From Lytechinus pictus (lineage: Eukaryota): a DNA stretch of 64,000 nucleotides. This document shows, piece after piece, positions 9,601-30,600 of this stretch (position 1 is the first letter of the stretch; the number at the start of each line of letters is the position of its first letter). The translations under genes were made by a program, and so were the position numbers. The notes under the pieces are model-generated. The model did not search any database. It was not told the origin of the DNA and saw nothing but the letters and a program-made list of their open reading frames with translations. The stretch spans positions 12,276,001 to 12,340,000 of the forward strand of contig NC_087245.1 in NCBI RefSeq assembly GCF_037042905.1. The letters are read 5' to 3'.

Positions 9601-12600
9601 TTACATTTTTTGGGGGGGCATTGAACTTTGTCAAGGATATAAAAACATACATAAAAAGTTGCATCTTTCTTTCAAGTACAGATCATAGGAAGTGAAATCA
9701 AACATGTAAATACCTATTACAAAATAAATAGTCCAAAAAAATTAATGAAACTGAGGTAAAATCCCACAAAACTGAAAATAGATAAATGTACTAACCTGAT
9801 AATGATGCCATTCTCAACAGAGAAGCTGTCTGTTGGTAGACCAGCAATATTCCAAGCCCTAATCTGGACCTGGTCTCCAAGAGTGTTACTAAGAGAGAAC
9901 TCTGCTGATGTTGGGATTCCATTAGCACTGACTTCGCTGAACCATTCTTTGATTTGATCCTGTATGAAAATAACATCTCAGCATTATTTCCGTATTCATT
10001 ATGATGCAAAGAATTGTGCTCATCTCCATATACTACCCATTAACATGAGTTTGGAATTGCAACAGATTATCTGAGCAACATGAGAGAAAGAAATATCATT
10101 CATACAAGGTGTAAGCCATGTTGTGTCTTGCCCACTTGTGAAAATGACCAGAAAATATCGCGATTTGCAAGGGCACGCAACAGAATTGTCTCAAAAGTTC
10201 ATTGTGAAATAACTGGGATGGAATAACATTTGTCGTAAGAGTCTTGCATACTACATGTAAACTTTAATTCTGACCTCAAAATGACCTTTGACCTTACCAT
10301 GTGACCTCCAAACACAATGCAGGTCTCCTAAGTACAGCTACAACCCAAGTTTGATTTGAAATTGACTTACGGATGCGGAGTTATGTATCATAAGAGAGTC
10401 TTGCATGTAAACTTTAATGTTGACCTAAAAATGACTTTTGACCTTACCATGTGACCTCCGACTGCAGCATATCATACAGGTCCCCTAAGTACATTTACAA
10501 TCCAAGTTTGGTTGAAAAGAGACTTACGGTTGCAGAGTTATCTGTAATAAGAGAGTCTTGCATGTAAACTTTAACGCAGACCTGAAAATGAACTTTGACC
10601 TTACCATGTGACCTCCGACTGCAGCATGACATGCAGGTCCCCGAAATACATCTACTATTTAAGTTTGGCTGAAAAGTGACTTACAATTGCAGAGTTATGT
10701 GTCATAAGAGTCTTGCATGTAAACTTTAACGTTGACCTGAAAATGACATTTGACCTTACCATGTGACCTCTGACTGCAGTATAACATGCAGGTCCCCTAA
10801 GTACATCTACCATCTAAGTTTGGTTGAAAAGTGACTTACGGCTGCAGAGTAATGTGTCATAAGAGTTCCATATGGAATAGAGAATTTTACTTTAGAAACT
10901 ATCTTGATTTTTTTATAACCCATTATTTTTTATATATTGATGTACCACAATACTATCAAAGTTTATTGACCCTAAATGACCTTTGACCTTGGTCATGACG
11001 GATTCATGTCAAATTTTGCTTGATTACATGCTCATAAAATCATACATAAAAAAAGTCTCTGAATTTAGTAATTTGATTACACTAAAATAAAATTCCAATG
11101 AAATTCAAATGCTAAAAATCAGCACGCACGGCATAAAATCAATATACGATCTTATCACATGACCTATTACATGAGAGAAATTAAAATAGAAATTATCATT
11201 AAGACAATAAAGTTGTCGATGTAGGCGCAGTATAGCAAGAGTACTGCGTATTGCGCCGATAGAAAACATCCCCCAAAATGAACTACAACATCGAACCGTG
11301 CGTGATGACGCTCAAAGATAGAAAATTGGCGCCCTAAAAAATCGACAGCAGACGAGAATCTATAAATAAATAGACTGGCCAAAACTTGGTCGATTTGACA
11401 CCGCCAACAACTACAATGAACAATAATTGGATTTTATGGTTCTGAGTGGAATAATTGACAGTTGACACATTTTTTGAAGCAACAGATGCATTCTTCTCAA
11501 CATTCATGATCGTGTGAATGCCGAACTACTGGTTAAACATTTTACATGTTTTAGGCAGTCTTAATTTCATTCGTATTAATGCCGCTCACCTCGGCAATGA
11601 ACTAAACTTTTAAATAGCCTTCCCTCTCAAAACGTGCATAATTATGAACTTGCATTTTAAGACAATTACCACTTAACAAATATAGTAAAATCGCGCTTGA
11701 TCAACGTTATTACAGAAAGCGGAGTGTTCGAAGATTTTATTTATTTTACTCCTAAGCAAACGCACCTGGTGAAATCCAGACTCTGTTTGGAAATGGTTGA
11801 AATTGGTTCAATAGCAGCTTTCATACCCGTCAAAGCAGATACTCGATGGCTGACGTCAAAATCAACTTTGTCTCTTGCAAGGGGGTAAAGGCGAATCGCT
11901 ACAACCAACGCTTCGAGCCCAAAGACTTGAATCATCACCAATACCAACGCCATTGTCATTATTGCCTTTATTAGATGGAAACAACTTTGTCTTTAGAAAG
12001 GGAACTCCATGCTAGGAGGTATAGGCGAGTGGCGAAAAAAAAAATCGACGCTTAACTACAAAGGACATAAGTCATCATTGACACCACTTCTCTTATTGAT
12101 CATCAAAATGGCATCAACGACGAGGATGGATCAAAGGAACCGAATTTCTTTGAGTTGAACTTCTCTGCTTTCCATTACATTGATGATTTATGGTTACTAT
12201 AGAGATTTAAAAAAAAAACCGGCAAGACTTGAACCAATCGTCTGAGATGTTGTGACGCAAGGTTGTGTGATAGCGAATTTCTTCCGACATCGGCAAATAA
12301 AGGTAACTTTGGAATCATGATGAAGGATATTCACCAGTTCAGTACTAATAATCTGCACAACGACTGGTGAAAATTCATTTCTTCGATACTTCAAGAGCAA
12401 GGAAAGAGATCGAGATATCAAATGATCTCTATGTCCTACTTAAATTTAAGATATATTTACACTTCACATACTGAGTCCAAGTGCTAACGAGAACATGGAT
12501 TGTATCAATTATGACATTATTCAGATACGAGATTTTTATTCAAAGTGATCACTATACGAGTAACGTTTGTCACATCAATCACATTAGTTTCATATTTCTT

Positions 12601-27600: not shown

Positions 27601-30600
27601 AGAAATATATACTTAGAAAGATTTATTATTGTCAAAATATTATTCATTGTTTGTCGTATTTTTTTTAAGTAATCTATAAATGAACTTTTTATTAAAGCAG
27701 AAAATTGAAATAATACGAAAAGAAAAACGAGTATGCCAGTATCGTATAGTAATTATCATGATAAAAACTCGTCCGTGTTTTAAGATTAAACGGTCGATGA
27801 AAATGAAAGAGGATATGACGTCCGCTTTGATGACATTCCGTTATAATTTATTTCAGATATGATCCTCACAAAAACCAATTGCCTTACTAAAGGTCTACCG
27901 TGAACCATGTTCAAATATCTAATACATTCAAGACAATAATGGATGAGCTCATGAAAAAATATGGAAAATGGTGAAACAAATTAATCCTTATTCAATGTCA
28001 AAATGTAAAAAAAAAGAAGATTGAATTGGTTTCCAAAAATGCTATTTATATTAACAACACTGGCGCCATATTTTATTACTAAGTGATATGACTTACTCCA
28101 ACAGCTGATTGAATAACACCTTCAAATATTTCTTTTATTTTTCTTTTTTTTCTATTCTAAATTATTTCTCCCCATTTCCAAGAGGTAAGGGCTGCAATAA
28201 ACTCAAACCCGCAATAGCTCAAGAGAAAATACAAACATAATATGAATCGAAATCAAATTTCTGTTTACATTTAATAAGCCCAATTCATTACTTTAAAGAG
28301 CGAATCTGACGGATAAACAAAATTTTGCGACTATAGCAATATTTTGATTTGCCCATTCCATTTCTTAGGAGTTACGTTTTACGAACATTTTTCTTCTCAG
28401 TTGACCCTTAATGTGGTCTCATCGTCGCGAGAATCGGCGAATAAAAAAAAAAACTTCAGCGACATCATCTTACCACCGTTCGCAATGGCTTAAATGATTC
28501 TATCAATTCTTGCCACGTACGCGAGGAACTGTTTGCTGCTCAAAATTCATTTGTGACAACAACAAAAACTGTTTGCGAAGATTGAAAATGCTTAGAACAT
28601 TCTGGCACTAATTTCACGATCCCTTATTCGCTACCCTCGCAAGTATTCTCCAATCAGTGAGATATCATCCCCTTTAAGAATAGTCTATTATTTTCCTAGA
28701 GAGTATTTCACATCGAGCGAGGGCCAGACTAAATGGCATTACAAGACAATTACTGACTATTATAGCTATATAGTGCATAGGCGGATCCAGGGTGTGAAGC
28801 GGTCACGCCCATCCCCCCCCCCCTAATTGGGGGTGAACAAGGGGAAAAGAAAAGAAAAGGAGAACAAGAAGATAGGATAAAACCAGAATGATAAAAGAAT
28901 CGTTATGGGGTAAACAAAATAATTGGGAAATAGGAACTTTAAGGTCATTATACGAAATAAAAAATCACTCGCGATTCGCATTGTCCGTTGAGTAAGATGA
29001 TAATCTGCTCAAGACCTTAACAGGCCTTAAAATATCAGTTCCATGTCAAAGTGAACAAATCATTCTGTTCGCGATTCGAGTTTTCATGACTTTGTTTTAG
29101 CGAAATGTGCATCCTGTTCATGATTACAAAAATGTGCTGAACGTAAAAATAAAAATGAAAAATAACTGGTGAGATGCTTTCCTCTCAAGATTTTCCACAA
29201 TCAGTACTTGAAATGTCCCATTTACAAGTAAGTATTTTTTCAGCCCGCGTTGCATCGTTTTTAATTATTGAGTCAGAAAGACATCCTATTCATGTTAACA
29301 AAAAAGATCTTAGAATATCTTGTTATGCGCTCGCATCATTAATTCAATGAGATTCGTAACCTCTTACGAATTTTCCTATAGGTCTACATGTTAGACAGTG
29401 CTTAAAATTTTCCCTTTCGGATCAGATCATCAACAATTTTACATCGTGCTTAATTACACTGCTTGTTCTTTAACTAAAAACGTGCTTAATCTGTCCAGTT
29501 TTCAGATCGGGCTTCACGCTCAAATCATTTATGTATTTAGGAAGATACGCGGCATCTTTATCATGATTACAAAAAGTGTATAGAATGTGATATATATATA
29601 TGCACGATTCAATTTTTAATTTGATTTTTTCCTTAGGGTTTGTAAATGAATTGTTACACTTTAATGTCATTTTGTTTCAAAATAAATAAGCACTTAAAAC
29701 CAGAAGCAGAAATAAATGAGTGCATGCATTTTGGATTTTTGGGGGGGGTTGTTTTGTTTGTTTTTTCGTTAGCGTTGATGTTTTTTTCTCCATAATGGCT
29801 GTTTATCCAAATCAATCAAAATTCGAAGAAACTTGGTACAAATATCATAAGTCTCATACACAACGAATTTATTTTAACTGGGATGAGATCACTGAATGTA
29901 TATTGTCACCAAGGCAACATTAATTAACTAATTTTCGACGAGATGAAAGTATATGCTTGTCGACCTTGTTAGTAATAAATGGATGAAAGCGGTTAATGAA
30001 AAGAGAAATGAATGAAGGATGAAGTACAATATAAACAAATGTTAATAATTCAATGTGTAACAAATACCATACTTTCATAGGATTGCAACTCATGAATCGT
30101 TCTAATCAACATGTACCATGGGGATTACACTTTACAAAATTTTGCATTCTTTAACAATAGAAAACAGTATACTATGTCATTAAATTTTCATATCTTAATA
30201 TGATGGTTAGCTACTCAAAACATGAACAATGTATATGTATGTGATCAATATGATATTGATCATAATAGCTCACATAATTTGAATATGAGGAAAGACTGAA
30301 GAATGCAATTTAATTGTCCTGTACTGGAAGTTTTTTGGAACTAGGTTTGATCAATACTGATGTGGTCATGTAGATGACATTTCATACATCTCTGGTCAAC
30401 AGTGAAATTCATATTTTGATGAGGTAGGCACTACTCAAGGCCTATGATTACAAATATCATGATAACTATACTGATCTTATTCTGAATAAAAGGGGGAGGG
30501 GAAACTGAATTATGAATTAATAAAATGATAACAAAACTAGGTTTGATCATTATTGATCAATGTGGTCATTTGTGGCTAATTAAATTTCACAAGCACTGAT

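What the first reader, a model, noticed from the sequence alone, without database searches (positions are those of the whole stretch)
11120..29990. Sharply bounded CpG-rich island inside a CpG-depleted gene body
Seen: dynein introns are nearly free of CG and rich in TG/CA. By hand I count 0 CG in 30241-30480 against 13 CG in 11161-11400, and CG stays frequent to ~29990, including in non-coding DNA. The transitions near 11.1 kb and 30.0 kb bracket the GPCR cluster rather than the intron ends. Known: invertebrate gene-body methylation depletes CpG in germline-transcribed genes. Inference: a ~19-kb domain either escapes germline methylation while being transcribed through by the host gene, or it is a block inserted too recently to have decayed.
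Basis: partly seen in the sequence, partly recalled or inferred. Interest (0 to 1): 0.7.

Follow-up and report, generated by a model that had tools for sequence, protein, structure and literature searches.

The report
Unmethylated GPCR cluster inside dynein intron
A 19-kb stretch holding three receptor genes sits inside one intron of a sea-urchin dynein gene and has kept its CpG sites while the rest of the gene has lost them; the arrangement is shared with distant urchins, so it is an old domain that probably escapes germline DNA methylation, not a recent insertion.

Summary
A two-change-point fit puts the CpG steps at 11120 and 30000. CpG o/e is 0.93 inside and 0.32 outside, at equal GC content.

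The block lies inside one 25-kb intron of a minus-strand DNAH7-like dynein gene. That gene's ~100-kb transcription unit is otherwise CpG-depleted. The block carries three intact, intronless, GPR84/moody-like receptor genes on the plus strand, all under purifying selection.

Recent insertion is refuted:
- The same nesting occurs in L. variegatus, and in Diadema antillarum in the same intron.
- The right step maps to the same place in L. variegatus; the left step maps to the same place in a strongylocentrotid contig.
- The block has no terminal repeats and no second copy in its genome.

Between the two Lytechinus genomes, CpG sites turn over at the GpC baseline inside the block (0.22 vs 0.17) but fourfold faster in the flanking intron (0.54 vs 0.135). 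So the domain most likely has been free of germline methylation for a long time, although spliced dynein mRNA shows the host is transcribed across it.

No 5mC was measured, and the protecting mechanism is inferred. This is a clean, conserved example of the known mosaic methylation of invertebrate genomes, in an unusual nested setting.

The parts
11120..30000 (.). CpG-normal domain (o/e 0.93; 2.99 CpG per 100 bp), inferred to be unmethylated in the germline
   Evidence: Change-point fit; composition; CpG turnover at the GpC baseline against L. variegatus
9961..35001 (-). Host intron of the DNAH7-like dynein gene, about 25 kb; other gaps between detected exons of this gene are at most 7.3 kb
   Evidence: tblastn with P0046: aa 2856-2893 at 35115-35002, then aa 2897-2948 at 9953-9798; rest of the gene
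9796..9960 (-). Dynein exon just left of the host intron
   Evidence: tblastn. It matches positions 2883-3047 of a 5333-nt contig of run X1 with 0 mismatches, and reads of the total-RNA runs X21-23 fit the minus strand
35002..35115 (-). Dynein exon just right of the host intron
   Evidence: tblastn; the same exon is found in L. variegatus at L002:20827-20940
13181..14299 (+). GPCR1: intronless rhodopsin-class receptor, 372 aa, nearest solved relative GPR84
   Evidence: PF00001 at 7.5e-37; PDB match to GPR84 at 1e-27; intact ortholog in L. variegatus with dN/dS 0.035; orthologs in Diadema and S. purpuratus
23571..24566 (+). GPCR2, 331 aa
   Evidence: PF00001 at 2.2e-38; 97% identical to the L. 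variegatus 'moody-like' protein; dN/dS 0.128
25287..26318 (+). GPCR3, 343 aa counted from the ATG; tandem paralog of GPCR2
   Evidence: PF00001 at 2.1e-36; direct repeats D4 and D7; dN/dS 0.193. Diadema has a single gene in place of GPCR2 and GPCR3
11340..11875 (+). Conserved noncoding block just inside the left step; putative GPCR1 promoter or 5' region
   Evidence: 67.6% identity over 558 bp to strongylocentrotid contigs L025 and L026. The CpG step lies 100-200 nt upstream of the block in both lineages. X1 contig coverage starts at 11837
10238..11009 (.). Satellite-like array of 157-bp Helentron-type units, abutting the left step on the depleted side
   Evidence: very high multi-copy RNA read depth
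18886..20203 (.). Helentron-like element, CpG-poor, inside the domain
   Evidence: Repeat families D2 and D5-D13; o/e 0.57 at 19-20 kb
21107..22282 (.). Helentron-like element of a young high-copy family; accounts for the o/e 0.35 dip inside the domain
   Evidence: Copies 90-96% identical across the genome
1..11119 (-). CpG-depleted dynein gene body, 3' side (AAA5/AAA6 exons)
30001..64000 (-). CpG-depleted dynein gene body, 5' side (AAA1 to stalk exons)
   Evidence: The depletion runs from about -20 kb to +84 kb in window coordinates and matches the transcription unit

Best explanation
The block is an old chromatin domain that stays free of DNA methylation in the germline. It consists of a cluster of three functional, tissue-restricted, antisense GPCR genes nested in one intron of a DNAH7-like axonemal dynein gene. 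The rest of the dynein gene body is methylated and has therefore lost about two thirds of its CpGs.

Shown:
- The nesting, its antiquity, and the conserved positions of the steps.
- Baseline CpG mutability inside the block against fourfold mutability in the flanking intron.
- A spliced dynein mRNA that joins exons on both sides of the intron.

Inferred:
- The domain is protected locally by the chromatin state of the silent or poised receptor cluster. That could be Polycomb-type H3K27me3, H2A.Z, or binding of unmethylated CpG. Such a state would keep H3K36me3-guided DNMT3 out even though RNA polymerase passes through.
- The left edge is anchored at the GPCR1 promoter. The right edge lies a few kb past the last receptor gene.

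My odds: about 0.9 that the domain is germline-unmethylated and ancient, and about 0.55-0.6 that active local protection is the mechanism. The confidence given is for the whole statement, mechanism included.
For: - CpG step: it lands at 11120 and 30000, at equal GC content.
- Host intron: the dynein exons on each side encode consecutive residues, so no exon is missing.
- Gene body: the depleted domain, -20 to +84 kb, equals the dynein transcription unit, and the block is its only large hole.
- L. variegatus: same nesting and same step. Its right step maps to window positions about 29550-29990.
- Diadema: two GPCR orthologs lie after the orthologous dynein exon, and o/e drops about 2.5-3 kb past the second one.
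- Strongylocentrotid contigs: their CpG step lies 100 nt upstream of a conserved block, against 200 nt in the window.
- Turnover between the two Lytechinus genomes: in the noncoding island, CpG differs by a transition at 62/285 sites (0.218) and GpC at 0.171 (p=0.17). In the flank, CpG differs at 26/48 sites (0.542) and GpC at 0.135 (p=4e-8). Island against flank gives p=1e-5.
- Non-CpG divergence is also higher in the island, 8.05% against 5.74% (p=9e-7). This fits a chromatin state different from the gene body.
- The receptor genes are intact, with dN/dS 0.035-0.19.
- No terminal repeats join the two edges, and the genome holds no other copy of the block.
- RNA: the dynein exon lies in a 5.3-kb spliced contig. 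GPCR1 is silent in three total-RNA runs but covered from 11837 onward in X1.
- Literature: sharp all-or-none methylation domains in Ciona sperm (PMC3827831), and mosaic methylomes in sea-urchin gametes (PMC8291442).
Against: - No 5mC measurement was available. CpG turnover is only a proxy.
- The flank sample is small (48 CpG sites, right side only).
- Island CpG turnover is 1.27 times GpC. That is not significant, but low-level methylation is not excluded.
- In Diadema the CpG-normal state runs leftward over at least two dynein exons, so the left edge is not universal among urchins.
- Read-through by the host gene in germ cells specifically was not shown.
- The library type of run X1 is only a guess, so the GPCR1 transcript start is tentative.
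- Nothing here tests which chromatin mark, if any, protects the domain.
Confidence: 0.6

Rival explanations
1. Passive epigenetic inheritance. The cluster was unmethylated when the arrangement arose, and it has stayed so because methylation is copied by maintenance only. De novo methylation would be too rare to fill the hole, so no active protection is needed.
For: Step positions are stable across species. Ciona domains are all-or-none and identical between tissues (PMC3827831). No conserved sequence element was detectable at the right edge.
Against: Over 200 million years or more (my own estimate of the Diadema split), even rare spreading should blur a purely passive edge. In Ciona, transposons and a transgene body that landed in methylated introns became methylated (PMC3827831), so de novo methylation of intronic DNA does occur in an invertebrate.
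Confidence: 0.2
2. The host gene is not transcribed across the block in germ cells. Germline transcripts would stop near 30 kb and restart near 11 kb, for example from a bidirectional promoter shared with GPCR1. Transcription-coupled methylation would then never reach the block.
For: Both steps are sharp. The left one lies next to a conserved promoter-like block. In Diadema the 3' dynein exons next to the cluster are not depleted.
Against: A 5.3-kb spliced contig carries the exon at 9796-9960 with more than 2.2 kb of mRNA on each side. So full-length splicing across the intron occurs in at least one sample. A motor domain split at this point would be non-functional. No reads start near 11 kb on the minus strand in X21-23.
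Confidence: 0.12
3. CpGs in the block are kept by selection or by GC-biased gene conversion, not by lack of methylation.
For: The block holds three genes and at least one conserved noncoding element.
Against: Noncoding DNA in the block has o/e 0.89 and evolves faster at non-CpG sites than the flank does (8.05% against 5.74%). GC content is the same inside and outside. CpG turnover equals GpC turnover.
Confidence: 0.03
4. Recent insertion: a transposon, or a segmental copy taken from unmethylated DNA, that has not yet decayed.
For: The host intron is several times longer than any other intron of the gene. A real case of this kind is noted elsewhere in this genome (earlier finding s1-294501).
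Against: The cluster lies in the same intron in L. variegatus and Diadema. A strongylocentrotid shows the same left step. There are no terminal repeats and no donor copy. CpG turnover in the block is at baseline rather than elevated.
Confidence: 0.02

Closest known systems
Methylated and unmethylated compartments of mosaic invertebrate genomes (sea urchin: Bird and colleagues 1979, from my own knowledge; Ciona domains: PMC3827831; urchin gamete methylomes: PMC8291442)
   Same: Long CpG-depleted domains coincide with transcription units of broadly or germline-expressed genes. CpG-normal domains hold tissue-specific genes. Edges are sharp and states are all-or-none.
   Different: Here the unmethylated domain is not between genes. 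It is a 19-kb hole inside a single intron of a methylated, transcribed host gene, and its edge positions are conserved between urchin families.
Ciona transgene expressed from an intron of a methylated host gene (PMC3827831)
   Same: A promoter embedded in a methylated intron keeps an unmethylated patch and stays active.
   Different: There only about 1.8 kb around the start site stayed unmethylated, and the transgene body became methylated. Here whole genes, a 9-kb spacer and 3.7 kb of downstream DNA all stay CpG-normal.
Vertebrate DNA methylation valleys or canyons and intragenic (orphan) CpG islands (from my own knowledge)
   Same: Multi-kb unmethylated domains over silent or poised, often Polycomb-marked genes, set in a methylated background.
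   Different: GC content here is only 36%, so the block is not a CpG island by the usual criteria. The background is gene-body methylation of one host gene, not global methylation. Polycomb marking is untested.
Recently landed CpG-rich Kolobok-like transposon in an ADAMTS intron of the same genome (earlier finding s1-294501)
   Same: A CpG-rich block of about 10-20 kb inside a CpG-poor intron.
   Different: That block is reported to be bounded by terminal inverted repeats and to be recent. This one has no such ends, carries conserved host genes, and is shared with distant urchins.

Membership tests
Unmethylated domain of a mosaic invertebrate methylome | CpG o/e near 1 beside depleted flanks, after GC correction | tested here: met
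   0.93 against 0.32, at GC 0.358 against 0.344
Unmethylated domain of a mosaic invertebrate methylome | Sharp edges | tested here: met
   CpG spacing changes within about 100-200 bp at 11.0-11.13 kb and 29.99-30.1 kb
Unmethylated domain of a mosaic invertebrate methylome | CpG sites not hypermutable in the germline | tested here: met
   CpG turnover 0.218 against GpC 0.171 in the island (p=0.17); 0.542 against 0.135 in the flank (p=4e-8)
Unmethylated domain of a mosaic invertebrate methylome | Absence of 5mC in sperm or egg DNA | not testable with these tools
   No Lytechinus bisulfite study was found, and the one read-laying run went to RNA. S. purpuratus gamete bisulfite data exist (PMC8291442).
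Vertebrate-type CpG island | GC of at least 50-55%, with o/e above 0.6, over 0.2-2 kb at a promoter | tested here: not met
   GC is 0.358 and the length is 18.9 kb
Recent mobile-element or segmental insertion | Terminal repeats or target-site duplication at the two edges | tested here: not met
   No direct or inverted repeat pairs the 11.1-kb and 30.0-kb edges
Recent mobile-element or segmental insertion | Absent from the orthologous site in relatives | tested here: not met
   Present in L. variegatus and, in the same intron, in Diadema
Recent mobile-element or segmental insertion | Other copies or a donor locus in the genome | tested here: not met
   Only embedded transposable elements have other copies. 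Only 39 of 31483 candidates were scored, so this test is weak.
Nested antisense genes in a host intron | Complete genes on the opposite strand inside one intron, with the host exons spliced across them | tested here: met
   a spliced 5.3-kb contig contains the exon at 9796-9960
Rhodopsin-class GPCR (Pfam PF00001) | Full-length 7tm_1 match above the gathering score | tested here: met
   126-133 bits against a cut-off of 30.5, profile positions 1-260 of 260, for all three genes
Axonemal inner-arm dynein heavy chain 7 (DNAH7) | Best match to DNAH7 rather than to other dynein heavy chains | tested here: inconclusive
   One 99-aa exon matches human DNAH7 at 3.6e-45, against DNAH3 at 5e-39 and DNAH12 at 3e-37. 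No tree was built.

The most novel reading that the evidence does not exclude
The nested receptor cluster is actively insulated from transcription-coupled gene-body methylation. A promoter-anchored edge and a Polycomb-, H2A.Z- or CXXC-type chromatin state would block H3K36me3/DNMT3 targeting while RNA polymerase reads through. This insulation would have held at the same positions since before the toxopneustid-strongylocentrotid split, with the nesting itself older than the Diadema split. That would show that invertebrate gene-body methylation is not a simple by-product of polymerase passage. It would also provide a natural, genetically tractable locus for finding the boundary mechanism.
Probability: 0.3. 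Interest if true: 0.7.

Novelty: new member of a known kind. Interest (0 to 1): 0.45.

Why it matters
Gene-body methylation in invertebrates is usually explained as following transcription. Here a 19-kb domain lies wholly inside a transcribed, methylated gene, yet it shows no sign of germline methylation, and its edges are conserved between urchin families. That makes the locus a natural experiment. It separates "polymerase passed through" from "the local chromatin decides". It could be tested directly with existing S. purpuratus gamete methylomes and with genome editing in Lytechinus. Conceptually it remains within the known mosaic-methylation picture.

Tried and rejected
- Bisulfite route: no Lytechinus bisulfite study turned up in the literature. 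I therefore did not gamble the single run search on bisulfite libraries, and used RNA instead.
- ENA contigs with further urchin orthologs (P0003, P0005, P0160) returned no DNA. The S. purpuratus protein P0002 and the own-genome protein P0004 were not on record.
- Noncoding conservation with Diadema: only exons and coding sequence align, so no deep boundary element could be sought.
- Rfam gave no RNA genes in the window.
- No precedent for nested unmethylated genes in invertebrate host genes was found in the held papers. That library is incomplete.
- I ran no further search on the dynein orthologs. Top hits would follow the non-urchin query P0046, and the gene (about 96 kb) is near the 100-kb limit for DNA retrieval. 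As a result the L. variegatus left flank was not obtained.
- Total-RNA intronic coverage was too low on both sides of the left step to show or exclude nascent read-through.
- I did not run a genome-wide count of similar holes.
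Full report
OBSERVATION

CpG observed/expected in 1-kb bins is 0.04-0.56 over most of the window. It rises to 0.77-1.14 between 11 and 30 kb, and GpC o/e does not change in parallel. The log-likelihood gain over no change is about 136. Inside there are 564 CpG at o/e 0.93; outside there are 432 CpG at o/e 0.32. GC content is 0.358 inside and 0.344 outside. TG+CA o/e is 1.20 inside and 1.30 outside. Noncoding DNA inside the block is still at 0.89.

ANATOMY

- The block holds three intronless plus-strand ORFs at 13181-14299, 23571-24566 and 25287-26318. 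All are full-length rhodopsin-class receptors (PF00001, 126-133 bits). Their nearest solved relative is GPR84.
- A local tblastn with a full-length dynein (P0046) maps 43 minus-strand exons across the window.
- The exon for aa 2856-2893 lies at 35115-35002, and the next exon, aa 2897-2948, at 9953-9798. The block therefore lies in a single intron of about 25 kb. One exon matches human DNAH7 best.
- In 264 kb of own-genome context the dynein gene runs from about -14 kb to about +80 kb in window coordinates. The CpG-depleted domain (-20 to +84 kb) coincides with it. CpG-normal DNA resumes upstream of the gene.
- The block is the only large hole in that gene body. The intron pieces outside the block are depleted: 9961-11119 at o/e 0.41 and 30001-35001 at 0.23.

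AGE OF THE ARRANGEMENT

The genome is a Lytechinus species. GPCR2 is 97% identical to the L. variegatus protein, and noncoding DNA is 78-92% identical.

- In L. variegatus the GPCRs lie antisense inside a 4013-aa dynein gene. The same CpG step is present and maps to window positions about 29550-29990. An intact GPCR1 ORF is also there, unannotated.
- In Diadema antillarum, two receptor genes lie just after the orthologous dynein exon, inside a 4014-aa dynein gene. One is the ortholog of GPCR1; the other corresponds to the GPCR2/GPCR3 pair.
- From my own knowledge, Diadema separated from camarodont urchins more than 200 million years ago. Nesting in this intron is therefore ancient.
- Logan contigs carry a GPCR1 ortholog from the same 90% cluster as S. 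purpuratus XP_011664266. They are colinear with the window and share a conserved noncoding block (window 11340-11875). They show a CpG step about 100 nt upstream of that block, against about 200 nt in the window.
- The two edges of the block share no terminal repeats.
- The genome holds no other copy of the block apart from its embedded transposable elements. That search scored few candidates.

Recent insertion is therefore refuted.

MUTATIONAL TEST FOR GERMLINE METHYLATION

I aligned the window to L. variegatus over 12.9-35.2 kb. For each dinucleotide I counted the sites where either species has it and the other differs by one transition.

| Region | CpG turnover | GpC turnover (control) | p (CpG vs GpC) |
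|---|---|---|---|
| Noncoding island | 62/285 = 0.218 | 0.171 | 0.17 |
| Flanking intron, 30.0-35.2 kb | 26/48 = 0.542 | 0.135 | 4e-8 |

Island against flank for CpG gives p = 1e-5. CpGs in the block are thus not hypermutable, while those in the flank are about fourfold so. This is what an unmethylated hole in a methylated gene body predicts. It is the opposite of a block that is "inserted and now decaying".

Two further signals fit a distinct chromatin compartment:
- Non-CpG divergence is higher in the block, 8.05% against 5.74% (p = 9e-7).
It occurs at 0.11 per kb in the block and 0.12 per kb in the CpG-normal flanks. This contrast is marginal for this block alone.

EXPRESSION

- Three 2026 ribo-depleted total-RNA runs of the same species show minus-strand reads on the dynein exon. 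They show none at all over 11001-15000, so GPCR1 is silent there.
- Intronic coverage was nil on both sides of the step, so nascent read-through could not be judged.
- In run X1 the exon at 9796-9960 lies with 0 mismatches in the middle of a 5333-nt contig. The mRNA is therefore spliced across the 25-kb intron, and the polymerase must traverse the block.
- In the same run, contigs cover 11837 to at least 15000 continuously at similar depth. This suggests a GPCR1 transcript that starts just inside the left step. It is tentative, because the library type of X1 is only a guess.
- The receptors are functional genes, with dN/dS of 0.035, 0.128 and 0.193 against L. variegatus.

MECHANISM

Shown: an ancient, position-stable domain without CpG hypermutability, inside a transcribed and CpG-depleted host gene.

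Inferred: the silent or poised receptor cluster carries a chromatin state that excludes H3K36me3-guided DNMT3. Its left edge would be anchored at the GPCR1 promoter block. Its right edge lies about 3.7 kb past the GPCR3 stop codon in Lytechinus, and 2.5-3 kb past the second receptor gene in Diadema.

Rivals are passive epigenetic inheritance without active protection, and split germline transcription of the host gene. Selection on CpG, biased gene conversion and recent insertion are disfavoured or refuted.

One complication: in Diadema the CpG-normal state extends leftward over at least two dynein exons. The left edge is therefore lineage-specific at that depth.

COMPARISON WITH WHAT IS KNOWN

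Mosaic methylation with sharp, all-or-none domains that follow transcription units is established for Ciona (PMC3827831) and for sea-urchin gametes (PMC8291442).

The nearest precedent is in PMC3827831. Transposons in methylated Ciona introns become methylated. A transgene in such an intron kept only about 1.8 kb unmethylated around its start site. Here the whole 19-kb cluster escapes.

I found no paper describing nested unmethylated gene clusters in invertebrate host genes, but the held library is incomplete.

The block is not a vertebrate-type CpG island (GC 36%, 19 kb). An earlier finding of this scan describes the contrasting case in the same genome, a CpG-rich transposon that landed recently in an intron.

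VERDICT

This is a clean and conserved member of a known kind of genome compartment, in an unusual nested position that makes it a useful test locus. Interest 0.45.

Noticed in passing
window 7642-8113: A ~470-bp high-copy repeat (more than 2,400 first-look candidates, copies about 84-86% identical) carries 24 CpG. It produces the only CpG bump (o/e 0.77) in the depleted 3' part of the gene. Either it is a fairly young CpG-rich insertion or the element resists methylation.
   Followed up: partly
window 21107-22282 and 18886-20203; also 10238-11009: Helentron-like elements built of 157-192-bp units rich in TGACCT half-sites. The two copies inside the block are CpG-poor (o/e 0.35-0.57), the reverse of the main contrast. 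The family is young, with copies up to 96% identical. Its satellite units recruit thousands of multi-copy RNA reads at 10.8-11.0 kb.
   Followed up: partly
G000:C1:12340001-12342000 (window coordinates 64-66 kb; locus L015): A second small CpG bump (o/e 0.76) in a 5.8-kb dynein intron between the exons for aa 801-855 and aa 855-901. Its cause is not examined; it could be a transposable element or an internal promoter.
   Followed up: no
window 12.9-35.2 kb against L001+L002: Non-CpG divergence between the two Lytechinus genomes is lower in the methylated intron (5.74%) than in the unmethylated block (8.05%, p=9e-7). This would fit better repair in gene-body chromatin, but alignment bias was not excluded.
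   Followed up: partly
L001:250-1368 (L. variegatus CM031015.1): An intact 372-aa GPCR1 ortholog, 99.5% identical in protein, is present but not among the called genes of the L. variegatus record.
   Followed up: yes
L003+L004 (Diadema antillarum JBFRCO010002033.1:46867-77911): Diadema has one gene where Lytechinus has the GPCR2/GPCR3 tandem pair, so the duplication is younger than the nesting. The ~9-kb spacer between the first and second receptor gene has a similar length in both lineages, although its sequence does not align.
   Followed up: partly
window, and 264 kb around it: TACATGTA occurs 36 times in the 85-kb depleted dynein gene body. It occurs 2 times in the block and 11 times in 94 kb of CpG-normal flanks.
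   Followed up: partly
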